A DNA stretch of 64,000 bases from Chrysemys picta bellii (lineage: Eukaryota), in assembly GCF_011386835.1 (NCBI RefSeq), contig NC_088791.1, positions 8,804,001 through 8,868,000 of the forward strand, written 5' to 3'. The translations under genes were made by a program, and so were the position numbers. Under the pieces are notes generated by a model. It saw nothing but the letters and a program-made list of their open reading frames with translations, had not been told where the DNA came from and did no database searches. Shown here piece after piece: positions 12,759 through 60,634 of the stretch (within the stretch, counting starts at the first letter, position 1; each line of letters opens with the position of its first letter).

Positions 12759-12962
12759 ACGTTGACTGTTACTTATCTTCTAGGTGTTTGCAAATTGATT
12801 ACTTAATTACTTGCTTCATTATCTTTCCAGGTACTGGAGTTAAGCTGACTGGTCCGTATTTCCCCGGGTTGTCCTTATTTCCCTTTTTATAGGTAGGCAC
12901 TATATTTGCCTTTTTCCAGTCCTCTGGAGTCTCTCCCGTCTTTCATGACTTTTCAAAGATAA

Positions 12963-13110
12963 GGAGTATTTGTGGCACCTTAGAGACTAACAAATTTATT
13001 AGAGCATAATATATAATATATGCTCTAATAAATTTGTTAGTCTCTAAGGTGCCACAAGTACTCCTGTTCTTCTTTTTGCGGATACAGACTAACACGGCTG
13101 CTACTCTGAA
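12963..13110 (+). mobile_element. Mini fold-back Penelope insertion (pLTR 3' end only)
   Basis: 46-bp inverted arms 12963-13008 / 13019-13064 (1 mismatch); AT-only 10-nt loop; TSD ACTTTTCAAAGATAA at 12948-12962 and 13111-13125; 13020-13107 matches 24017-24104 at 87/88 nt. Confidence 0.96.
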
Positions 13111-14224
13111 ACTTTTCAAAGATAATCACTAATGGCTCAGACATCTCCTCAGTCAGTTCCTTGAGTATTCTAGGATGTATTTCATTAGCCAATGGTGTCT
13201 TGAAGACACCTAACTTGTCTCAGTAATTTTTAACTTGTTCTTTCCCTATTTTAGCCTCTAAACTACCTCATTTTCACTGCCATTCACTATGTTAGAAGTC
13301 CAATTGCTACTAACCTTTTTGGTGAAAAACAAACAAAAAAAGTCATTTAGCACTTCTGCCATTTCTACATTTTCTGTTATTGCATTTCCCCCCTCATTGA
13401 GTAACGGACCTACCCTGTCCTTGGTATTCCTCTTGCTTCTAATGTATTTGTAGAATGTTTTCTTGTTACCCATAATGTCTCTAGCTAGTTTAACCTCGTT
13501 TCGTGCCTTGGCCTTTTTATTTTTGTCCCTACATACTTGTGTTATTTGGTTAAATTCATCCTTTGTAATTTGACCTAGTTTCCACTTTTTGTAGGACTCT
13601 TTTTTGAGTTTCAGATCATTGAAGATTTCCTGGGTAAGCCAGGGTGATCTCTTGCCATACTTTCTATCTTTCTTACGCAGTGGGATAGTTTGCTCTTGGG
13701 CCCTTAATAATGTTTCTTTGAAAAACTGCCAACTCTCTTAACTGTTTTTCCCCTTAGACTTGCTTCCCACGGGATCTTACCTACCAACTTTGTGAGTTTG
13801 TTAAAGTCTGCATTCTTGAAATCCATTATCTTTATTGTGCTGTTTTTCTTCCTACCATTCTTTAGAATCATGAACTCTACTATTTCATGATCACTTTCAC
13901 CTAAGCTGCCCTCCACTTTCAAATTCTCAACCAGTTCCTCCCTATTTGTCAAAATCAAACCTAGAACAGCTATCTCCTAGCACCTTCTGAAATACAAAAT
14001 TGTCTCCAATACATTCCTGTTGGATAATGTGTAGCCTGCTGTATTATTTTCCCAACAGCTATCTGGGTAGTTGAAGTCCCTCATCACCACCAAGTCCTGT
14101 GCTTTGGATGATTTTGTTATTAGATATTATTAGAAATAAGATGGACACATTGGTAATCTCTCTGAATCATAAATTCAAATCCAGGTGGGGCTGGAATTGG
14201 CCAAAAGTTATTAGCATGTGACAC

Positions 14225-17135: not shown

Positions 17136-17870
17136 CATGGATTCCAAGTTTCCAAGGCCAGAAGGGACCATTGTGATCGTCTAGTCTGACCTGCATAATA
17201 CAAGCTATAGAACTTCCCCAGAATCATTCCTAGAGCAGATCTTTGGGAACAAAATCCAATCTTGATTTTAAAATGGTCTGTGTTGGAGAATTCACCACAA
17301 CACTTGGTAAATTGTTCCAATGGTTCATTACTCTTAATGTTAAAAATTTACTTATTTCCAGTCTGAATTTGTCTAACACCAACTTTCAGACACTGAATCA
17401 TATGATACCTCTCTCTGCTAGATTGAAGAGCCTGTTACTAAACATATGATCCCCAAGTAGATACTTACAGACTATAATAAAGTCACCTCTTAGCCTTCTC
17501 TGTGTTAAACTGAATAGATTCAGCTCCTTGAATGTATCACTATCAGGCAGGTTTTCTAATCCTTTAATCATTCTCATGGCCCTCTCCAATTTATTAACAT
17601 CCTTCTTGAATTGTGCACACCAGCACTGGATACAGTGTTCCAGCAGTTGTTGCACCCGTGCCAAATACAGAGGTAAATCTCCTACTCGAGATTCCCTGTT
17701 TATACATCCAAAGATCACACTAGCCCTTTTGGCCACAGCATTGCGGTAGGAGCTCACGTTTAAATGATTATCCACCATGACTCCCAAATCTTTTTCCACG
17801 TTGCTGCTTCCCTGGATAGAGTCTCATATCCTGTAAGTCTGGTTGATGTTCTTTGTTCTTCTATGTATAC
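17136..17870 (-). mobile_element. CR1 LINE, 5'-truncated and degenerate
   Basis: ORF 17398-17799 (EKDLGVMVDNHL...LLEHCIQCW...KELNLFSLTQRRLRGD) is CR1 ORF2 C-terminus; 3' UTR at 17136-17230. Confidence 0.92.
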
Positions 17871-17875
17871 ATTAA

Positions 17876-18206
17876 GTATCAGGGGGTAGCTGTGTTAGTC
17901 TGTATCCACAAAAACAACAAGGAGTCCGGTGGCACCTTAAAGATTAACAGATTTATTTGGGCATAAGCTTTCTTCAGATGCATGGAGTGAAAATGACAGA
18001 TACAGGCATAAATATACTGGCATATGAAGAGGAGGGCGTTACCTTACAACTGGAGAACCAGTATTGACAAGGCCAATTTAGTCAGGGTGGACGTGGTCCA
18101 CTCCCAATAATTGATGAGGAGGTGTCAATACCAAGAGAGGGAAAATTGCTTTTGTAGTGAGCCAGCCACTCCCAGTCCCTATTCAAGCCCAAATTAATGG
18201 TGTTAA
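17876..18206 (-). mobile_element. Penelope-like 3' fragment (pLTR plus end of endonuclease)
   Basis: Reverse-complement terminus ...GGATACAGACTAACACAGCTACCCCCTGATAC and GGTGCCACCGGACTCC block, homologous to the other pLTRs here. Confidence 0.88.
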
Positions 18207-18970: not shown

Positions 18971-19219
18971 ATCTAAGGGACTTGCATTCCTAAATCCCTC
19001 TAGGCACTTTCGAAAAATCTTTCCTCTGACTCTAGCTTTCGTTTGTTTGTGATAGTTTAAATATATTCTAAACTTGCTGGAGATACAGCAACTCAAATCC
19101 ATTGTTCTTGGATCAATTGACTGGTTGTATTTGTCTTGAAGTTCATTAGTATGAGCAACAAAACATGAAATACAGACTGCTACAGACTGTTTTCTAAACC
19201 AAAATATAAATTGCAAATA

Positions 19220-19412
19220 CATAGAATCTCAGGGTTGGACGGGACCTCAGAAGATCATCTAGTCCAACACCCTGCTCAAAGCAGGACCAATCCCCAATTA
19301 AATCATCCAACAGATTTTTGCCCCATATCCCTAAATAGTCCCCTCAAGAATTGAACTCACAACCCTGAGTTTAACAGGCCAATGCTCAAACCACTGAGCT
19401 ATCCCTCCCCCC
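19220..19412 (-). mobile_element. Tortoise Pol III/SINE (tRNA-derived head plus CR1-derived tail)
   Basis: Head GGGAGGGATAGCTCAGTGGTTTGAGCATTGGCCTGTTAAACTCAGGGTTGTGAGTTCAATTC has A and B boxes; tail 19220-19300 aligns to the CR1 3' end at 58116-58200. Confidence 0.92.
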
Positions 19413-19419
19413 TCTGACA

Positions 19420-19800
19420 GTGATACATATTATGTAGGCACTTGGACAGCACTTTTGATCTTCATAGAACATTTCAATTGTTAATCAATCCTCAAAATAC
19501 CGCTGTCATGTGCAGGGGTGCTAGAACAATTTGTATAGTGAAGATGCTGAGAGCCATCCAACCAAACTATATACCTTGTATATAATGGAAACCACTTCAA
19601 GCCAGGGAGTGCGGCAGCATCTGCCGCACCCGTAGTTTCAGCACCTATGGTCATGTGGACAGGTAATAATATGTCCATTTTATAGATGGGATAAGTGAGG
19701 CGGAGAGGTTAAATGACTTGAAAAAGGCCATGAGAGGAGTCAATATCAGAGCCAGGGTTAGAACTCAGTTCTGACCTCCCAGTCCTGTGCACTAATCACC
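19420..19800 (-). mobile_element. MIR/CORE-SINE interrupted by a hAT MITE
   Basis: CCATTTTATAGATGGGA.AAGTGAGGCGGAGAGGTTAAATGACTTG CORE segment; both halves flank the MITE at 19513-19649. Confidence 0.75.
19513..19649. mobile_element. hAT MITE
   Basis: Termini CAGGGGTGCTAGAAC...GTTTCAGCACCTATG; exact 8-bp TSD GTCATGTG (19505-19512, 19650-19657). Confidence 0.9.
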
Positions 19801-20689
19801 ACGCCAGACCTCTCAATGGGCCTCCATAGATTTCGTTATCACCCAAGTATGGAGAAGAAATAGGTTTATTACAATCCCTACTAGTCCTCATGAGACTGAT
19901 AAAGAACTGTTACAATGAAGCATGTCCCATTTAAATACTGTAACCTTTAAGCCAAATTTCTTAACAACAACATACTGTTTAGTCAGCTTGAAATGTTCTA
20001 AGATTTGCAAGCATCCCCAGTTTCCAAAGGTCAGACACAAGATAATACTGTATTTAAAAAAACAAAACAAAAAAACCCTTATAGCAAACGTAAGAAAGCT
20101 GGTAACAATACTTCATGATGGATTTACTGTTGTTTATTGGATGATTACATCATCTGGACTCCTTGTGAAAGGGACAGGCTAAGGCCCAGGAAGACGAATA
20201 AGCCCTACCACCAGATTAGTGCACTATAATGGGTGAGATGCAGAGATGCCATTAACGGCAGGGTTGGCGGTGTGATTTACCCTTCTGCACAGGCAAAACA
20301 TAGGTGTAACTTACTGGGTGGGTGTTAGGGACAGTAGGAAAAATGCAAGGGAAGCAACACAGGAATGAAAGCTGGTTTCAGAATGAAGGGGAGGTAAGGA
20401 AGTCATTCAAATCAGATCCAGGTGCGTCAAGTACTAGTCCCTGAGAAAGAGAGAGTTAAGGACGAGGGAGAGATTGTTTCGTGTTTGGCAGCCTCCTCCC
20501 TCGACACACCAATGCAAAAGTTAGGGAGTAAAAACCAGTACATAGGTAAAAGCCACCAAATTAAGGGGACCCATATCGGAACGCATGTAAAACTTCTCTC
20601 TAAAAAAAATTGCACACTGCTTCTGCTGCCAATACAGCCACAGGCATGTGACAACAGAAAAATGCTGGCGAGTCGCTCAGCTTGGGTAC

Positions 20690-20909
20690 CTGCAGAAGAG
20701 GCCGTTGAACTCCTAGCATCTTCATGGTGTCCGCATTGGCCAATATCTTCAGGGGGTCGGATGCCTTGGTGACACCTTCTATCTCTTTGTTGATCTCTGC
20801 TAGGACTTGATTAAGGAAGATGTTCTTGATGTACATGGTGAGGAACTCCCGGAGCGGACATTGTTTGGTTGGGCCAAGGCCCATGGCATGCTCAATCTCC
20901 TGAATAAAT
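20690..20909 (-). CDS. EXOC4: Internal coding exon of exocyst complex component 4 (Sec8); exon 11 by my recollection of the human structure
   Basis: Translates (R)[73 protein letters not shown], nearly identical to vertebrate EXOC4. Acceptor ttttatattttag|A with a candidate branch point CTAAG (A at 20936); donor CAG|GTACCC; 220 bp, phase 2 in, phase 0 out. Confidence 0.97.
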
Positions 20910-21012
20910 CTAAAATATAAAAAGGGAAATCATACTTAGCCACACAATACAATTACCAAAAAAGAAGAACAGGAGGACTTGTGGCACCTTAGAGACTAAC
21001 AAATTTATTAGA

Positions 21013-21052
21013 GCATAAGCTTTCGTGGACTATAGCCCACTTCTTCGGATGC
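21013..21052 (-). ncRNA. Minimal hammerhead motif in the inverted arm (EXOC4 sense strand)
   Basis: Exact reverse complement of 23981-24020. Confidence 0.78.
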
Positions 21053-21247
21053 ATATAGAATGGAACATATATTGAGGAGATATATATACACACATACAGA
21101 GAGCATAAACAGGTGGGAGTTGTCTTACCACCTCTGAGAGGCCAATTAATTAAGAGAAAAAAACTTTTGAAGTGATAATCAAGCTAGCCCAGCACAGACA
21201 GACAGTTAGATAACAAGTGTGAGAATACTTACAAGGGGAGATAGATT

Positions 21248-21940
21248 TCAATGTTTGTAATGGCCCAACCATTCCCAGTCCTTATTTAAACCGGAGTTGA
21301 TTGTGTCTAGTTTGCATATCAATTCTAGCTCAGCAGTTTCTCGTTGGAGTCTGTTTTTGAAGTTTTTCTGTTGTAATATAGCCACCCGCAGGTCTGTCAC
21401 TGAATGACCAGACAGGTTAAAGTGTTCTCCCACTGGTTTTTGAGTATTTTGATTCCTGATGTCAGATTTGTGTCCATTAATTCTTTTGCGTAGAGACTGT
21501 CCGGTTTGGCCAATGTACATGGCAGAGGGGCATTGCTGGCACATGATGGCATATATCACATTGGTAGATGTGCAGGTGAACGAGCCCCTGATGGTATGGC
21601 TGATGTGATTAGGTCCTATGATGATGTCACTGGAATAGATATGTGGACAGAGTTGACATCGGGGTTTGTTACAAGGATAGGTTCCTGGGTTAGTGGTTTT
21701 GTTCAGTGATGTGTGGTTGCTGGTGAGTATTTGCTTTAGGTTGGGGGGTTGTCTGTAAGCGAGGACAGGTCTGTCTCCCAAGATCTGTGAGAGTAAAGGA
21801 TCATCTTTCAGGATAGGTTGTAGATCTCTGATGATGCGCTGGAGAGGTTTTAGTTGGGGGCTGAAGGTGACAGCTAGTGGTGTTCTGTTATTTTCTTTGT
21901 TGGGCCTGTCTCGGGGACATAACCTCATAACCTCAGCCAT
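21248..21940 (-). CDS. Junction-created stand-alone GIY-YIG endonuclease ORF (230 aa from the first ATG); expression unknown
   Basis: ATG at 21940 (MAEVMRLCPR, from antisense RT sequence and the junction) in frame with DRPNK...CNKPRCQLC...VIYAIMC...YIGQTGQ...KH-stop of the inverted arm. The track's 21949 start is GTG. Confidence 0.45.
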   Translation of the reverse strand: MAEVMRLCPRDRPNKENNRTPLAVTFSPQLKPLQRIIRDLQPILKDDPLLSQILGDRPVLAYRQPPNLKQILTSNHTSLNKTTNPGTYPCNKPRCQLCPHIYSSDIIIGPNHISHTIRGSFTCTSTNVIYAIMCQQCPSAMYIGQTGQSLRKRINGHKSDIRNQNTQKPVGEHFNLSGHSVTDLRVAILQQKNFKNRLQRETAELELICKLDTINSGLNKDWEWLGHYKH

Positions 21941-22024
21941 GCAGAACACAACGCCATCTACAGCCTCAGAAACAACCCTGACATCATAATCAAAAAGGCT
22001 GACAAAGGAGGTGCTGTCGTCATC

Positions 22025-23785
22025 ATGAATAAATTGGAATATGACCAGGAGGCTGCTAGACAGCTCTCTAACACCACATTCTACAGGCCATTATCCTCTG
22101 ATCCCACTGAGGATTACCTAAAGAAACTACACCATCTGCTAAAAAAACTCCCTGACAAAGCACAGGAACAAATCTGTACAGACACATGCCTAGAACCCCG
22201 ACCAGGGGTATTCTATTTGCTACCCAAGATCCATAAACCTGGATATCCTGGACGCCCCATCATCTCAGGCATTGGCACCCTAACATCAGGCTTGTCTGGT
22301 TATGTAGACTCTCTCCTCAGACCCTACGCTACCAGCACTCCCAGCTATCTTCGAGACACCACTGACTTCCTGAGGAAACTACAATCCATCGGTGATCTTC
22401 CAGAAAACACCATCCTGGCCACTATGGACGTAGAAGCCCTCTACACCAATATTCCACACAAAGATGGACTACAAGCTATCAGGAACAGTATCCCTGATAA
22501 TATCACAGCTAACCTGGTAGCTGAACTTTGTGATTTTGTCCTCACCCACAACTATTTCACATTTGGGGACAATATATACCTTCAAGTCAGCGGCACTGCT
22601 ATGGGTACCCGCATGGCCCCACAATATGCCAACATTTTTATGGCTGACTTAGAACAACGCTTCCTTAGCTCTCGTCCCCTAACGCCCCTACTCTACTTGC
22701 GCTACATTGATGACATCTTCATCATCTGGACCCATGGAAAAGAAGCCCTTGAGGAATTTCACCATGATTTCAACAATTTCCATCCCACCATCAACCTCAG
22801 CCTAGATCAATCCACACAAGCGGTCCATTTCCTGGACACTACTGTGCTAATAAGCGATGGTCACATAAATACCACCCTATACCGGAAACCTACTGACCGC
22901 TACACTTACCTACATGCCTCCAGCTTCCATCCAGGACACACCACACGATCCATTGTCTACAGCCAAGCTCTAAGATATAACCGCATTTGCTCCAATCCCT
23001 CGGATAGAGACAAGCACCTACAAGATCTCTATCAAGCATTCTTAAAACTACAATACCCACCTGCTGAAGTGAAAAAACAGATTGACAGAGCCAGACGAGT
23101 ACCCAGAAGTCACCTCCTACAAGACAGGCCCAACAAAGAAAATAACAGAACACCACTAGCTGTCACCTTCAGCCCCCAACTAAAACCTCTCCAGCGCATC
23201 ATCAGAGATCTACAACCTATCCTGAAAGATGATCCTTTACTCTCACAGATCTTGGGAGACAGACCTGTCCTCGCTTACAGACAACCCCCCAACCTAAAGC
23301 AAATACTCACCAGCAACCACACATCACTGAACAAAACCACTAACCCAGGAACCTATCCTTGTAACAAACCCCGATGTCAACTCTGTCCACATATCTATTC
23401 CAGTGACATCATCATAGGACCTAATCACATCAGCCATACCATCAGGGGCTCGTTCACCTGCACATCTACCAATGTGATATATGCCATCATGTGCCAGCAA
23501 TGCCCCTCTGCCATGTACATTGGCCAAACCGGACAGTCTCTACGCAAAAGAATTAATGGACACAAATCTGACATCAGGAATCAAAATACTCAAAAACCAG
23601 TGGGAGAACACTTTAACCTGTCTGGTCATTCAGTGACAGACCTGCGGGTGGCTATATTACAACAGAAAAACTTCAAAAACAGACTCCAACGAGAAACTGC
23701 TGAGCTAGAATTGATATGCAAACTAGACACAATCAACTCCGGTTTAAATAAGGACTGGGAATGGTTGGGCCATTACAAACATTGA
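22025..23785 (+). CDS. PLE polyprotein, N-terminally truncated: reverse transcriptase plus Cys-rich linker plus GIY-YIG endonuclease
   Basis: 586 aa with no stops, open upstream to 21926 (HNLSHAEHNAIYSLRNNPDIIIKKADKGGAVVI). Motifs PGRPIISG, DVEALYTNI, GTAMG, RYIDD; linker CNKPRCQLC (a Neptune-type feature); VIY...YIGQT. Confidence 0.96.
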   Translation: MNKLEYDQEAARQLSNTTFYRPLSSDPTEDYLKKLHHLLKKLPDKAQEQICTDTCLEPRPGVFYLLPKIHKPGYPGRPIISGIGTLTSGLSGYVDSLLRPYATSTPSYLRDTTDFLRKLQSIGDLPENTILATMDVEALYTNIPHKDGLQAIRNSIPDNITANLVAELCDFVLTHNYFTFGDNIYLQVSGTAMGTRMAPQYANIFMADLEQRFLSSRPLTPLLYLRYIDDIFIIWTHGKEALEEFHHDFNNFHPTINLSLDQSTQAVHFLDTTVLISDGHINTTLYRKPTDRYTYLHASSFHPGHTTRSIVYSQALRYNRICSNPSDRDKHLQDLYQAFLKLQYPPAEVKKQIDRARRVPRSHLLQDRPNKENNRTPLAVTFSPQLKPLQRIIRDLQPILKDDPLLSQILGDRPVLAYRQPPNLKQILTSNHTSLNKTTNPGTYPCNKPRCQLCPHIYSSDIIIGPNHISHTIRGSFTCTSTNVIYAIMCQQCPSAMYIGQTGQSLRKRINGHKSDIRNQNTQKPVGEHFNLSGHSVTDLRVAILQQKNFKNRLQRETAELELICKLDTINSGLNKDWEWLGHYKH

Positions 23786-23980
23786 AATCTATCTCCCCTT
23801 GTAAGTATTCTCACACTTGTTATCTAACTGTCTGTCTGTGCTGGGCTAGCTTGATTATCACTTCAAAAGTTTTTTTCTCTTAATTAATTGGCCTCTCAGA
23901 GGTGGTAAGACAACTCCCACCTGTTTATGCTCTCTGTATGTGTGTATATATATCTCCTCAATATATGTTCCATTCTATAT

Positions 23981-24020
23981 GCATCCGAAGAAGTGGGCTA
24001 TAGTCCACGAAAGCTTATGC
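23981..24020 (+). ncRNA. Minimal type I hammerhead motif in pLTR
   Basis: GCAT-CCGAAGA-A-GTGGGC(TATA)GTCCAC-GAAA-GC-TT^ATGC: stem I GCAT/ATGC, palindromic AAGCTT stem III, predicted cut between 24016 and 24017; U4 replaced by C. Confidence 0.8.
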
Positions 24021-24514
24021 TCTAATAAATTTGTTAGTCTCTAAGGTGCCACAAGTCCTCCTGTTCTTCTTTTTGCGGATACAGACTAACACGGCTGCTA
24101 CTCTAATACAATTACCATGACCTACACATTGTAATGTCCCATACATACAGCTAGTGTGAGAACACAGGGTCAATCATGGGAGCTGGCGGGAAAGAGTTGT
24201 AAGATTCAGAGGCAATGGAGTTCTAACAGAGTGCACTGGACACAGGCAGGACTCCTGAGTTTATCACCAGCTATGCCCTTGACTGTACCCAATTTGAGAT
24301 TTCTTAAAGGCTCCTGATCTTCAGAAAGGGCTGAGAATCTACTTAAAATGGAGGCACCCAAAATCATTAGTCACTTTTGAAAATTCTGACCTGCATGTGA
24401 ACTTGGGCAAATCATTTTAACTACCCATGACTCAGTTTCCCTTTCTGTAAAATTATGTTCCACTTTATTTCGAACAATAACAGCCCCTCACTCTTAAATG
24501 GCTCTTTTCATCAG

Positions 24515-34274: not shown

Positions 34275-34427
34275 GTCTGGAAATCTGTATTTTCCACTGC
34301 ATGCATCCGATGAAGTGGGTTTTAGCCCACGAAAGCTTATGCTCAAAAAAATTTGTTAGTCTCTAAGGTGCCACAAGTACTCCTGTTCTTTTTGCGGATA
34401 CAGACTAACACGGCTGCTACTCTGAAA
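34275..34427 (+). mobile_element. Penelope pLTR 3' fragment without inversion
   Basis: Ends GCGGATACAGACTAACACGGCTGCTACTCTGAAA like the 24-kb element; no TSD found. Confidence 0.92.
34303..34342 (+). ncRNA. Minimal hammerhead motif
   Basis: GCAT-CCGATGA-A-GTGGGT(TTTA)GCCCAC-GAAA-GC-TT^ATGC. Confidence 0.78.
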
Positions 34428-35663
34428 TTTGAGAGAAAGTCTAGGGTCATCTGTGCCCGATTCTGATCCCAGTTATAATCATGTAAAGCAACTGGCTTCA
34501 CAGGAGTTCTTCCCTATTCCCACTGGTGTATCTGAGAGTGAAATATGGTCCTGTGAAGTTTATAGCATCCAAAGTCTAACTTTATTCCATTTCTATCTCT
34601 AGATACTATTACCATGTTACCCCTGGTGGAAGAATCAAAGCAACAATTGCCTGGTAAACATCCACCACCACAGAACTAACAGTTGACTTGCCAACACTGA
34701 ACTGTTTAGCCATAAATCTGTAATAAACCAGCAGGGTTTTTCCTCTCTCTCCATGTCACACTGCCACTGTGATGCCTCTCTGGATGACTATTCAGAAATG
34801 ACTGACAATATTGCTCTAATTCACTGGTGCTGGGCTCTTTGATTATTCATGACGACCAACATACTTATTTACTGGCAAAGACAAGCCAGGGACACCAGTG
34901 AATTATGACACGGCTCCCAGCATCAAGTTGAAAATCATCCCAGTGGAGCATATTTTAAGAAATTTGCATTGGAAGGAGAAGACTTCCCAATTCTCCACAA
35001 ACAAAATTAACCCAGCATTCAGCATCTTTATTCTCGTCTGAACTCCTGCTTTATAAAGATAGTGAAGGGAGCTGGGCCTTTTGAGGCACTTATTTATTCA
35101 TCATGTAGTACATCTCATCAGATAAATCTACATACACACACAGAGAGGCCTTTTCCCTTATAGCACTTCAGTGTGAAGAGAAAATTCTGGCTCTGCTACA
35201 TTTAGCGCAGTATGAGATATGAAACCAATGCACCATGCTGCTCCCCCCACATAAATGTTCCCTTCAATTCATCCTTCTAAGCACTTCATCCTTCCAAGTT
35301 ACATAAATTGAGTTCCATGCAGTTTACTGGCAGGGAGAAAGGGGGTGGTTTGGCATCTTTCTGATTAGGCCTTAAAAGCCCAGGTCCTCTCGGCACCTTG
35401 TGGACTCTGACTACACTGTGCCCCCTTCTATAAGAATGGGGTCTTGCTCTTGGACAAAATTTCTTCTTTTCCCACCACTGTGTAGCATGCGGTCTATTTA
35501 TTACTCTCCACCCAGTGCTGGCTACATTACAGTACATAGTATACATTTCATATATAATATGCAGTGCAGTCTGGGAGCTTCTGGAATGAAATGGGCTGCA
35601 TCAATGTAAACAATTTTTATATGGCGGCTTCTGTAACTGGTGCCATTTATACTATAAACTCCC

Positions 35664-46181: not shown

Positions 46182-46378
46182 CAAAGAGTCCGGTGGCACC
46201 TTAGAGACTAACAGATGTACTGGAGCATAAACTTTCGTGGGTGAATACACGCATGCGTCTGACGAAGTGGGTATTCACCCACAAAAGCTTATGCTCCAAT
46301 ACGTCTGTTAGTCTATAAGGTGCCACAGGACTCTTTGTTGCTTTTTACAGATCCAGACTAACACGGCTACCCCTCTGA
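46182..46378 (+). mobile_element. Fold-back Penelope mini-insertion (different subfamily)
   Basis: 67-bp imperfect arms 46182-46248 / 46271-46337; 41-nt unpaired 3' tail; exact 12-bp TSD TATGGAAAGCTT (46170-46181, 46379-46390). Confidence 0.95.
46255..46294 (+). ncRNA. Minimal hammerhead motif with G12A change
   Basis: GCGT-CTGACGA-A-GTGGGT(ATTC)ACCCAC-AAAA-GC-TT^ATGC; the inverted arm still reads CACGAAA. Confidence 0.7.
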
Positions 46379-58103: not shown

Positions 58104-59598
58104 TAGAATCATAGAATCATAGAATATCAGAGTTGGAAGGGACCTCAAGAGGTCATCTAGTCCAACCCCCTGCTCAAAGCAGGACCAATTCCCAGCTAAA
58201 TCATCCCAGCCAGGGCTTTGTCAAGCCAGGCCTTAAAAACCTCCAAGGAAGGAGACTCCACCACCTCCCTAGGTAACGCATTCCAATGTTTCACCACCCT
58301 CCTAGTGAAATAGTTTTTCCTGATATCCAACCTGGACCTCCCCCACTGCAACTTGAGACCATTGCTCCTTGTTCTGTCATCTGCCACCACTGAGAACAGC
58401 CGAGCTCCATCCTCTTTGGAACCCCCCTTCAGGTAGTTGAAGGCTGCTATCAAATCCCCCCTCATTCTTCTCTTCTGGAGACTAAACAATCCCAGTTCCC
58501 TCAGCCTCTCCTCATAAGTCATGTGCTCCAGACCCCTAATCATTTTTGTTGCCCTCCGCTGGACTCTTTCCAATTTTTCCACATCCTTCTTGTAGTGTGG
58601 GGACCAAAACTGGACACAGTATTCCAGATGAGGCCTCACCAATGTCGAATAAAGGGGAACGATCACGTTCCTCGATCTGCTGGCAATGCCCCTACTTATA
58701 CAGCCCAAAATGCCGTTAGCCTTCTTGGCAACAAGAGCACACTGTTGACTCATATCCAGCTTCTCGTCCACTGTGACCCCTAGGTCCTTTTCTGCAGAAC
58801 TGCTACCTAGCCATTCGGTCCCTAGTCTGTAGCAGTGCATGGGATTCTTCCGTCCTAAGTGCAGGACTCTGCACTTGTCCTTGTTGAACCTCATCAGGTT
58901 TTTTTCGGCCCAATCCTCTAATTTGTCTAGGTCCCTCTGTATCCGATCCCTACCCTCTAGTGTATCTACCACGCCTCCTAATTTAGTGTCATCTGCAAAC
59001 TTGCTGAGAGTGCAGTCCACACCATCCTCCCGATCATTAATAAAGATATTAAACAAAACCGGCCCCAGGACCGACCCTTGGGGCACTCCGCTTGAAACCG
59101 GCTGCCAACTAGACATGGAGCCATTGATCACTACCCATTGAGCCCGACGATCTAGCCAGCTTTCTATCCACCTTACAGTCCATTCATCCAGCCCATACTT
59201 CTTTAACTTGGCGGCAAGAATACTGTGGGAGACCGTAACAAAAGCTTTGCTAAAGTCAAGGAATAACACATCCACTGCTTTCCCCTCATCCACAGAGCCA
59301 GTTATCTCATCATAGAAGGCAATTAGGTTAGTCAGGCACGACTTCCCCTTCGTGAATCCATGCTGACTGTTCCTGATCACTTTCCTCTCCTCTAAATGTT
59401 TCATAATTGATTCCTTGAGTACCTGCTCCATGATTTTTCCAGGGACTGAGGTGAGGCTGACTGGCCTGTAGTTCCCCGGATCCTCCTTCTTCCCTTTTTT
59501 AAAGATGGGCACTACATTAGCCTTTTTCCAGTCATCTGGGACCTCCCCCGATCGCCATGAGTTTTCAAAAATAATGGCTAATGGCTCTGCAATCTCAC
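58104..59598 (-). mobile_element. Young 5'-truncated CR1 LINE with an uninterrupted RT/C-terminal frame
   Basis: ORF 58196-59602 ([56 protein letters not shown]); (ATTCTATG)n tail at 58104-58125. No endonuclease domain; the annotated start is not a real initiator. Confidence 0.97.
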
Positions 59599-60634
59599 CC
59601 AAGGAAGAGAGATTCAGTGTTCATGGTAATAAAGGTGAATCACAGAGTGTGAGGGGCAGGGGGAGCCCTGGAAGAGAACCACTGAAGGCAGAAAAGGGGT
59701 AACATTCTCTGACTTTTCAAACAAGCCAAGAATCTGACAGGCCCTAGAGGATTTTAGGTGCCTACTAGTAAATTTTAGATTACTCTTCTAAATAGAACAT
59801 AATCTCAAAATCACTAGAATGAGCACAGAATTCTCTGGCAGCCACCAGACTCCCAGCCTATTTGGAGAAATATCCTGCAGGTTGGTTCACTAGACTAAGT
59901 TCCTAGCTGTATGTGTTTTCTGCCCTGCTGGTGACTAAGCTCCTTTTCTCCATAGAGTTTCTGCTATTTATCAGTCAGGAATCAAAACGCTGATGCTTCA
60001 TACAGAGGTGCAATTAGTTGTCTCACCATCCAGTCCACCCACTGGGCCACTGTGTTGAACTGCCATTTATATAAATGGATGCTCAGGGATTCCACCTGTT
60101 ACACCCATCAGCACAGAAGGTATGTCGTGCTACAATCGCCTCATACAGTAGGCAGCAGTCAACAGGCTAAGTTTCTTGAGTCTGATTTTGAATTGGATTG
60201 TGAATGCTAAAGAAACACTTGCCACACCGGACAATACTCCCAGACAAGGCTGGACTAGAAGATTTTGAAGCTGATTACTCAACGGTAAAAAAAATAATGA
60301 GACAAAAATTACAACCGCAATATTAATAGCCTGCACTGTATATACGGATTTAAATAACATATGTGGAGGATACGTTTGAAACTCCTATTTTCATGTACTT
60401 AACAACCAGGCAAGATGAACTGAGACATAAAGCAGCAGTGCTATGCAGTATTTCCCAATCTATTACTGGGTTATTGTAAGGCATTACAAGCCACATTATC
60501 TCACAGTAAAAGACAAAAAGTTTAATAATGTTGTCAAAGGCACCAGAACCAGATCAAAACCTTGAACTAATTTTGTTAAATGTAATATATGTATAGCTTA
60601 TGCTATTATAAACAAAGTGCAAAGCTACATGATA

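What the first reader, a model, noticed from the sequence alone, without database searches (positions are those of the whole stretch)
12948..13125. Mini PLE insertion begins at the predicted hammerhead cleavage site
The forward part matches 24017-24104 at 87/88 nt. Homology starts at (T)ATGCTC, and the predicted cut in the family ribozyme is GAAAGCTT^ATGC. Nothing of the ribozyme core upstream is present. The inverted arm turns at the same position through an AT-only loop that matches neither element nor target. The simplest reading is that an ~90-nt 3' self-cleavage product was itself reverse transcribed, folded back and integrated with a 13-15 bp TSD. That would be genomic evidence that the CCGA-variant ribozyme cuts in vivo and that its 3' product is mobile. 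One example could also be chance 5' truncation.
Basis: partly seen in the sequence, partly recalled or inferred. Interest (0 to 1): 0.72.

Follow-up and report, generated by a model that had tools for sequence, protein, structure and literature searches.

The report
Mini Penelope fold-back turning at ribozyme cut
A 149-bp hairpin-shaped insertion of the last ~90 bases of a Penelope-like retrotransposon has both arms ending at the base where the element's hammerhead ribozyme should cut. This is real and suggestive, but one locus cannot show that the ribozyme cuts in living cells.

Summary
Window 12963-13111 is a young fold-back insertion of the 3' end of an RT + GIY-YIG Penelope-like element (PLE), flanked by a perfect 15-bp target-site duplication (TSD).

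- **Forward arm:** 13020-13107 matches reference copy 24017-24104 at 87/88.
- **Inverted arm:** 12963-13007 is the reverse complement of 24017-24061.
- **Filler:** 12 nt, A/T only, matching neither element nor target.
- **Ribozyme:** no part of it is present. Both arms stop at the predicted scissile bond (GAAAGCUU^AUGC, 24016^24017), with 1-2 ambiguous T.

In all three fold-backs in this window, the inverted arm stops 30-47 nt short of the forward arm's 3' end. This suggests separately primed cDNAs, as seen in vitro for an Anolis PLE. Two cDNAs ending at one predefined base is therefore notable.

Against this, the example is single within a very large scan. Laying contigs of whole-genome runs on the element showed no dominant 5'-end peak at 24017: fewer than 24-27 contigs, against 175-180 at the 3' end. 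The core is a weakened U4C variant. Published Anolis data found no RNA ends at the cut.

My odds are about 0.4 for run-off on a ribozyme-cleaved template and about 0.35 for chance. The RNA need not be about 90 nt, because reverse transcription in PLEs starts internally. Unchecked notes from this scan report similar coincidences at other loci of this genome.

The parts
12948..12962 (.). Left target-site duplication, ACTTTTCAAAGATAA
   Evidence: Identical 15-mer at 13111-13125
12963..13007 (-). Inverted arm: reverse complement of the PLE tail from the predicted cut (ref 24017) to ref 24061/62. It lacks the last ~43-47 nt of the element.
   Evidence: 44/45 identical to the forward arm
13008..13019 (.). 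A/T-only filler AATATATAATAT between the two arms
   Evidence: No match to the element or the local target. Not a palindrome beyond 1 nt.
13020..13111 (+). Forward arm: PLE tail from the predicted cut to the family 3' end (ACTCT + GAAA)
   Evidence: 87/88 to 24017-24104. GAAA is the consensus after 24104 in 180/175 contigs.
13111..13125 (.). Right target-site duplication
23981..24020 (+). Reference minimal hammerhead in the pLTR of the young PLE copy: helix I GCAT/ATGC, core CCGAAGA, stem II 23993-24008, GAAA 24009-12, AGCT palindrome, cut 24016^24017
   Evidence: The minimum-free-energy fold gives helix I plus stem II. No Rfam hit.
24017..24104 (+). Reference 88-nt tail between the cut and the insertion 3' end
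22025..23785 (+). PLE ORF of the source family (RT + C-terminal GIY-YIG)
   Evidence: Pfam RVT_1 2.4e-11, GIY-YIG 1.4e-05
46185..46378 (+). Second, older mini fold-back of a related subfamily, used for comparison. Its arms end at different places around the hammerhead (about ref 23997 and about ref 23970), not at the cut. TSD at 46170-84 / 46379-93.

Best explanation
This is a young, extremely 5'-truncated fold-back insertion of a Penelope/Poseidon-type retrotransposon.

**Inferred steps**
1. The element's GIY-YIG nuclease cut both strands of an A/T-rich target 14-15 bp apart.
2. Reverse transcription was primed from both DNA ends on element RNA. It started at the element's internal start sites: ...ACTCTGAAA for the forward arm, and ~45 nt further upstream for the inverted arm.
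3. Both cDNAs ran to the same template base.
4. A few untemplated A/T residues were added, and the two ends were joined.

The single most likely reason both cDNAs stop at that base is that it was the physical 5' end of the RNA. That end would be produced by self-cleavage of the pLTR hammerhead, which works as a dimer and is probably helped by the element's protein.

**Shown:** the anatomy, the family, the TSD, and the coincidence with the predicted scissile bond.

**Inferred:** two-strand priming, run-off, and ribozyme cleavage in vivo.
For: - Both arms end at 24017, a position fixed in advance by hammerhead rules.
- In all three fold-backs of the window, the inverted arm's outer end lies in a 14-nt zone (ref 24061-24074), 30-47 nt short of the forward 3' end. 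This is the published one-sided 'tail' of PLEs (PMC8557442). It fits two RT start sites and extension of both DNA strands in vitro (PMC11167929). The arms are therefore separately primed.
- In the other two fold-backs the inner ends of the arms differ, so equal ends are not automatic.
- The forward arm is 88-92 nt. This equals the 85-92 nt between the hammerhead cut and the RT start in Anolis PAc. There, an RNA starting 6 nt before the cut is still an active template, and the ribozyme cleaves when the protein is present.
- A stall at a hairpin base would end at or after 24021 (helix I) or 24009 (stem II), not at 24017.
- An independent contig in run X5 has a forward arm starting exactly at 24017. 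Several printed joints start at 24016-24022.
- A natural U4C hammerhead keeps enough activity in vivo for viroid infectivity (PMC3088659).
Against: - There is one locus. With roughly 2-5% chance per arm, and hundreds of windows scanned, a few such coincidences are expected by chance.
- In contigs of two whole-genome runs, 5' loose ends at 24017 did not reach the six best-supported places per run. That means fewer than 24 and fewer than 27 contigs, against 180 and 175 at the 3' end. The class is therefore at most a minority.
- In Anolis, ribozyme mutants did not change insertion size, and no RNA-seq reads began or ended at the cut.
- The core carries U4C, and the motif lacks helix III, so it needs a second copy to fold.
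- RNA contigs span the cut uncut (table 8).
- Homology may run 1-2 T past the cut.
Confidence: 0.4

Rival explanations
1. The insertion is the same ordinary PLE fold-back, but the breakpoint is a coincidence. Either a cDNA truncated near the cut by chance and was duplicated by snap-back self-priming, or two cDNAs truncated there by chance. The ribozyme played no part.
For: - 5' truncation and adjacent inverted 5'-truncated copies are the normal state of PLE insertions (PMC8557442; PMC4209133).
- 3 of 5 PLE events in this window are under 200 bp. Short products are common, so each base near the tail has a 1-3% chance.
- The scan has read more than 700 windows of this genome, so a few exact coincidences are expected.
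- There is no dominant peak at 24017.
- The extra T / TT next to the arms fit a template that ran past the cut.
Against: - If the arms are independent cDNAs, as their outer ends suggest, both stopping within 2 nt of one predefined base has a probability of about 1e-3 per fold-back.
- The filler is not palindromic, which makes simple snap-back awkward.
- Printed joints crowd at 24016-24022.
Confidence: 0.35
2. Reverse transcriptase stopped at the folded or dimerised ribozyme, or at protein bound to it, without any RNA cleavage. The two template RNAs may have been held head to head by the trans helix III (AAGCUU). Both cDNAs then ended at the ribozyme and were joined there.
For: - Breaks of other copies lie on the ribozyme but not at the cut. 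Mini fold-back 2 ends at about ref 23997 and about ref 23970.
- The X5 contig has an inverted arm ending inside stem II, and joints fall at 24019-24022 and 23979-23982, the two strands of helix I.
- The PAc protein is predicted to be a dimer and extends both strands.
Against: - A stall before helix I or stem II predicts ends at or after 24021 or 24009, not at 24017.
- Clustering may reflect alignment clipping at variable sites 24022/24023 and divergence between subfamilies.
Confidence: 0.12
3. The insertion is a remnant of a larger fold-back PLE, like 20946-24117. Its unstable palindromic centre was deleted symmetrically after insertion and repaired with A/T filler.
For: Long inverted repeats are prone to central deletion (general knowledge). 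A 953-bp-arm fold-back of the same family lies 8 kb away. Symmetric arm ends and filler DNA fit end-joining repair.
Against: - The arms are not symmetric at their outer ends, and the deletion end would still have to hit the cut by chance.
- The element is very young (87/88; 44/45 between arms), leaving little time for this.
- There is no trace of longer arms.
Confidence: 0.08

Closest known systems
Canonical EN+ Penelope-like elements (Penelope/Poseidon clade) and their 5'-truncated inverted insertions
   Same: - RT + C-terminal GIY-YIG ORF in the source copy.
- pLTR with a minimal hammerhead.
- TSD and extreme 5' truncation.
- An adjacent inverted 5'-truncated copy.
- A 30-47 nt 'tail' present on one side only.
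- An A/T-rich target.
   Different: It is only 149 bp, contains no ribozyme, and both arms end at the ribozyme's scissile bond. That placement of breakpoints has not been reported in the papers I could read.
Anolis carolinensis PAc (Poseidon) in vitro system, Frangieh et al. 2024 (PMC11167929)
   Same: - The distance from the hammerhead cut to the RT start (85-92 nt) matches the 88-92 nt forward arm.
- Both DNA strands are cleaved and extended.
- There are two start sites that define the tail.
- A template starting about at the cut is active.
   Different: In PAc the ORF starts inside the ribozyme. Here the ribozyme lies 195 nt after the ORF stop of the copy in the window. PAc data argue that uncleaved RNA is the main substrate, and no RNA ends were seen at the cut.
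Minimal dimeric type I hammerheads of PLEs (Cervera and de la Pena 2014, PMC4209133)
   Same: - Helix I and stem II.
- No helix III apart from a palindromic AGCU.
- Located in the pLTR, and reported in turtles.
- Pairs on opposite strands 100-700 bp apart were noted.
   Different: The core is CCGAAGA (U4C) in the young subfamily. Older copies in the window have CUGAAGA or CUGACGA.
5'-processing ribozymes of non-LTR retrotransposons (HDV-like in R2, L1Tc, RTE; reviewed in PMC7761336)
   Same: The idea that a self-cleaving ribozyme defines the 5' end of the retrotransposed RNA.
   Different: Those ribozymes sit at the element's 5' end and stay in the product. Here the 3' cleavage product carries no ribozyme, and the product is a non-autonomous stub.
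L1 twin-priming inversions
   Same: An inverted 5' segment made by priming from the second target strand.
   Different: In twin priming the two segments cover adjacent, non-overlapping parts of the RNA. Here the inverted arm repeats the first 45 nt of the forward arm.

Membership tests
Penelope-like element insertion (EN+ PLE) | The source family encodes RT plus a GIY-YIG endonuclease in one ORF | tested here: met
   ORF 22025-23785: RVT_1 2.4e-11, GIY-YIG 1.4e-05. The arm copy 21251-21949 also has GIY-YIG.
Penelope-like element insertion (EN+ PLE) | The insertion is homologous to the 3' end (pLTR tail) of that family | tested here: met
   87/88 to 24017-24104; nhmmer E 8.6e-28
Penelope-like element insertion (EN+ PLE) | Target-site duplication | tested here: met
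   15/15 at 12948-62 and 13111-25
Penelope-like element insertion (EN+ PLE) | 5' truncation with an adjacent inverted 5'-truncated copy, and a 30-40 bp tail at one end only | tested here: met
   The inverted arm ends at ref 24061/62 and the forward arm at 24104+GAAA. The same asymmetry is seen in the other two fold-backs. At 43-47 nt, the tail here is slightly longer than the published 30-40.
Minimal type I hammerhead of PLEs (in the reference copy, not in the insertion) | Conserved core C3, G5, A6, G8, A9 ... G12 A13 A14, A15.1-U16.1, H17 | tested here: met
   CCGAAGA ... GAAA GCUU^ at 23985-24016
Minimal type I hammerhead of PLEs (in the reference copy, not in the insertion) | U at core position 4 | tested here: not met
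   C at 23986. No alternative letter above 2% in family contigs. U4C is a known weakened natural variant (PMC3088659).
Minimal type I hammerhead of PLEs (in the reference copy, not in the insertion) | Helices I and II form; helix III is replaced by a palindrome that allows a dimer | tested here: met
   The minimum-free-energy fold has GCAU/AUGC and a 6-bp stem II; AAGCUU is palindromic. The predicted cofold pairs the two stem II strands in trans rather than forming a hammerhead dimer, so the dimeric active fold is not demonstrated.
Minimal type I hammerhead of PLEs (in the reference copy, not in the insertion) | Match to curated Rfam hammerhead models | tested here: not met
   No hit at the gathering threshold or at E up to 10. 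This is expected for motifs without helix III.
Minimal type I hammerhead of PLEs (in the reference copy, not in the insertion) | Self-cleavage at the predicted bond | not testable with these tools
   Needs an in vitro or in vivo assay
Non-LTR retrozyme | Tandem units, each carrying a hammerhead, with the unit bounded by cleavage sites | tested here: not met
   The insertion has no ribozyme and is an inverted repeat, not a tandem one
L1-type twin-priming inversion | Inverted and direct segments derive from adjacent, non-overlapping parts of the RNA | tested here: not met
   The inverted arm duplicates the first 45 nt of the forward arm

The most novel reading that the evidence does not exclude
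The Penelope hammerhead does cleave the template RNA in vivo, probably as a dimer on the dimeric RT/endonuclease, and cleaved RNAs are still reverse transcribed from the internal start sites. This would leave a recognisable genome-wide class of ~90-nt stubs and fold-backs that turn exactly at the scissile bond. In the strongest form, the dimeric ribozyme is the hinge at which the cDNAs from the two target strands meet. That would explain why PLE insertions are so often inverted.
Probability: 0.3. Interest if true: 0.7.

Novelty: new member of a known kind. Interest (0 to 1): 0.42.

Why it matters
[quoted passage not shown] The one biochemical study found cleavage only with protein and saw no RNA ends at the cut (PMC11167929).

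If insertion breakpoints pile up on the scissile bond, ordinary genome assemblies would hold a fossil record of ribozyme cleavage in the germ line. The question could then be answered by counting, without any RNA work. It would also tie the ribozyme to the odd inverted architecture of these elements.

As it stands, this locus is a clean example and a sharp hypothesis, not evidence.

Tried and rejected
- **Rfam:** scans of the whole window (gathering threshold) and of 20900-24200 (E up to 10) found no hammerhead. The models do not cover helix-III-less motifs.
- **More copies for a breakpoint histogram:**
  - An exact-pattern scan of metagenome contigs gave two bacterial chance hits.
  - Genome contigs and viral contigs gave none.
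  - The search of earlier findings by sequence was blank.
- **Sensitive search inside the window:** blastn and nhmmer found only five PLE-tail insertion events, too few for statistics.
- **Read laying:** all runs were contigs and only the six best loose-end places per run are printed. The result is an upper bound, not a histogram. Its depth profile rises 3.6-fold over 23980-24035, but conservation of the tail between subfamilies confounds this.
- **TSD for the 34288-34428 copy:** none of 8 nt or more was found.
- **Templated filler:** I considered whether the filler comes from the A/T-rich stretch 23955-23967. AATATATG matches 8 nt, and a contig in X1 carries a real TATG-mediated deletion 23964-24015. 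I rejected this as not significant in A/T-only sequence.
- **Dead-core control:** I first took mini fold-back 2 for a dead-core lineage. This was wrong. Its AAAA is a post-insertion CpG change, since its other arm keeps GAAA.
- **Lunse et al. 2017:** the paper is not held.

Full report
**What is there**

Window 12948-13125 holds a compact insertion:

| Part | Coordinates | Notes |
|---|---|---|
| Left TSD | 12948-62 | 15-bp direct repeat ACTTTTCAAAGATAA |
| Inverted arm | 12963-13007 | 45 nt |
| Filler | 13008-19 | 12 nt, A/T only (AATATATAATAT) |
| Forward arm | 13020-13107 | 88 nt, followed by GAA(A) |
| Right TSD | 13111-25 | Same 15-mer |

- The forward arm matches 24017-24104 at 87/88. 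At the one mismatch (24057), the insertion carries the base that most family contigs carry.
- The inverted arm is the reverse complement of 24017-24061 and matches the forward arm at 44/45.
- The filler matches neither the element nor the surroundings.
- A family profile aligns both arms only from the column of the predicted cut onward, so nothing of the ribozyme is present.

One nuance: homology can be read one T further in the forward arm and two T further in the inverted arm. In A/T-only filler this is weak either way. It is also what untemplated A-addition to a run-off cDNA would look like (my inference).

**What family it belongs to**

The reference at 24017-24104 is the 3' end of a young fold-back element at 20946-24117. 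[quoted passage not shown] That makes it a canonical endonuclease-bearing Penelope-like element (PLE).

I did not verify either point.

The pLTR lies 195 nt after the ORF stop and carries a minimal type I hammerhead:
- helix I GCAU / AUGC
- core CCGAAGA
- a 6-bp stem II
- GAAA
- the palindrome AGCU in place of helix III
- U17, which puts the scissile bond at 24016^24017

This is the dimer-type motif described for PLEs, turtles included (PMC4209133). Rfam models do not detect it.

Position 4 is C instead of U. No alternative letter above 2% appears in family contigs. The older copies in the window have CUGA. A natural U4C hammerhead is much less active in vitro but sufficient in vivo for a viroid (PMC3088659).

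**Census in the window**

BLAST and nhmmer find five insertion events of this superfamily:
1. This mini fold-back.
2. An old long copy at 17870-18200 (-) that has lost stem II.
3. The big fold-back at 20946-24117.
4. A ~140-200-nt copy ending at 34428, whose 5' end lies at least 50 nt upstream of the cut.
5. A second, older mini fold-back at 46185-46378, with a 15-bp TSD (14/15).

Two features matter.

- **Outer ends cluster.** In all three fold-backs the inverted arm stops short of the forward arm's 3' end. The stops are at ref 24061/62, about 24062-65, and 24074, against 24104+GAAA. This is the published 'tail at one end only' signature (PMC8557442). For the Anolis element PAc, the tail was shown to be the stretch between two internal RT start sites, and the protein cleaves and extends both DNA strands (PMC11167929). 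The outer ends fall in a 14-nt zone even for 953-nt arms. I therefore read the inverted arms as separately primed cDNAs, not snap-back copies.
- **Inner ends usually differ.** In the other two fold-backs the inner ends of the arms are different: 953 nt against ~2.2 kb, and about ref 23997 against about ref 23970. Equal inner ends are therefore not automatic. Only this insertion has both at one base, and that base is the scissile bond.

**How it most likely arose**

In PAc the hammerhead cut lies 26 nt into the ORF and reverse transcription starts at 111-118 nt, which is 85-92 nt downstream of the cut. An RNA truncated to 6 nt before the cut is still an active template. The ribozyme cleaves only when the protein is present.

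The 88-92-nt forward arm here has the same geometry. The template can be long, and only the part between its 5' end and the internal start site is copied.

If the RNA 5' end was the ribozyme cut, both cDNAs would run off there. They would pick up a few untemplated residues and be joined.

A simple stall at secondary structure would be expected before helix I (at or after 24021) or before stem II (at or after 24009), not after the last base of helix I.

**Why this is not proof**

- **Scale of the scan.** If a cDNA end hits a given 3-5-nt window with 2-5% probability, two independent ends do so at about 1e-3 per fold-back. A symmetric process (snap-back, or central deletion of a palindrome) does so at 2-5%. 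This scan has notes on more than 700 windows of this genome, so a few such loci are expected by chance. The earlier notes reporting similar coincidences have no denominators and were not checked: s1-329924, s1-318462, s1-318506, s1-322523, s1-325673, s1-335693, s1-337940.
- **Partial genome-wide test.** I laid the contigs of two whole-genome runs and two RNA runs on window:23900-24117.
  - About 19,000-22,000 contigs matched.
  - The 3' end at 24104 is the best-supported loose end (180 and 175 contigs, consensus continuing GAAA).
  - The best 5' loose ends (23903, 24005, 24067) are all subfamily or indel artefacts.
  - Position 24017 is not among the six places printed per run. It therefore holds fewer than 24 and fewer than 27 contigs, which is under about 13% of the number of 3' ends.
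  - A dominant spike is excluded. A several-fold enrichment is not.
- **Hints in favour.** One X5 contig has a forward arm starting exactly at 24017 while its inverted arm reads through the cut into stem II. The starts of printed joints also crowd at 24016-24022 and 23979-23982, the two strands of helix I. But only the best-supported rows are printed, and variable sites 24022/24023 can clip alignments.
- **RNA evidence.** RNA contigs span the cut uncut. Summed RNA/DNA depth drops about 4-fold across the cut, but the tool warns that contig depth is not a local measure.
- **Published Anolis data.** Uncleaved RNA appears to be the main substrate, and no RNA-seq ends were found at the cut.

**Verdict**

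The feature is real, young, and structurally an ordinary (if very small) PLE fold-back insertion. The coincidence of both arm ends with the predicted scissile bond is exact and interesting.

| Reading | Odds |
|---|---|
| Ribozyme run-off | ~0.4 |
| Chance truncation or snap-back | ~0.35 |
| Stall or dimer hinge without cleavage | ~0.12 |
| Post-insertion central deletion | ~0.08 |

The value of the finding is that it turns an open question into a counting exercise on the assembly: do PLE hammerheads act in vivo, and at what step? I could not run that count.

Noticed in passing
window 46185-46378 (TSD 46170-84 / 46379-93): A second mini fold-back of an older PLE subfamily (core CUGACGA). The forward arm keeps the whole hammerhead. 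The inverted arm ends in stem II, and the arms abut without filler at a 10-nt palindrome, ACGCATGCGT. The forward arm's GAAA has decayed to AAAA by a CpG change, while the inverted arm keeps GAAA.
   Followed up: partly
window 17870-18200 (-): An old PLE copy in which the hammerhead has lost stem II and the G of GAAA (CTGAAGA directly followed by AAGCTTATGC). One search also lists six contigs with internal deletions of 35-143 nt across the ribozyme, one of them through a 4-nt TATG microhomology. Deletions removing the ribozyme may be recurrent.
   Followed up: no
window 24024-24029 (and 13027-13032 in the insertion): A canonical AATAAA lies 8 nt after the predicted ribozyme cut and is carried into every tail-only insertion.
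   Followed up: no
window:23900-24117, read laying: In RNA run X15, summed contig depth is highest over the 5' half of the hammerhead and halves from the cut onward, while DNA depth rises. The RNA/DNA ratio falls from about 4.5e-3 to about 1.1e-3. This may reflect differential stability of cleavage products, or only silent tail-only copies. Contig depth is unreliable.
   Followed up: partly
window 58199-59602 (-): A 468-aa ORF with a strong reverse transcriptase domain (RVT_1, 5e-35). It has no GIY-YIG match, and no tail of this PLE family was found near it. It is a different retroelement.
   Followed up: partly
window 34288-34428 (+): A short PLE tail copy with core CCGATGA (also U4C) and a 3-nt deletion in the T-rich run. 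No TSD of 8 nt or more was found. Its 5' limit is blurred, about 50-95 nt upstream of the cut.
   Followed up: partly
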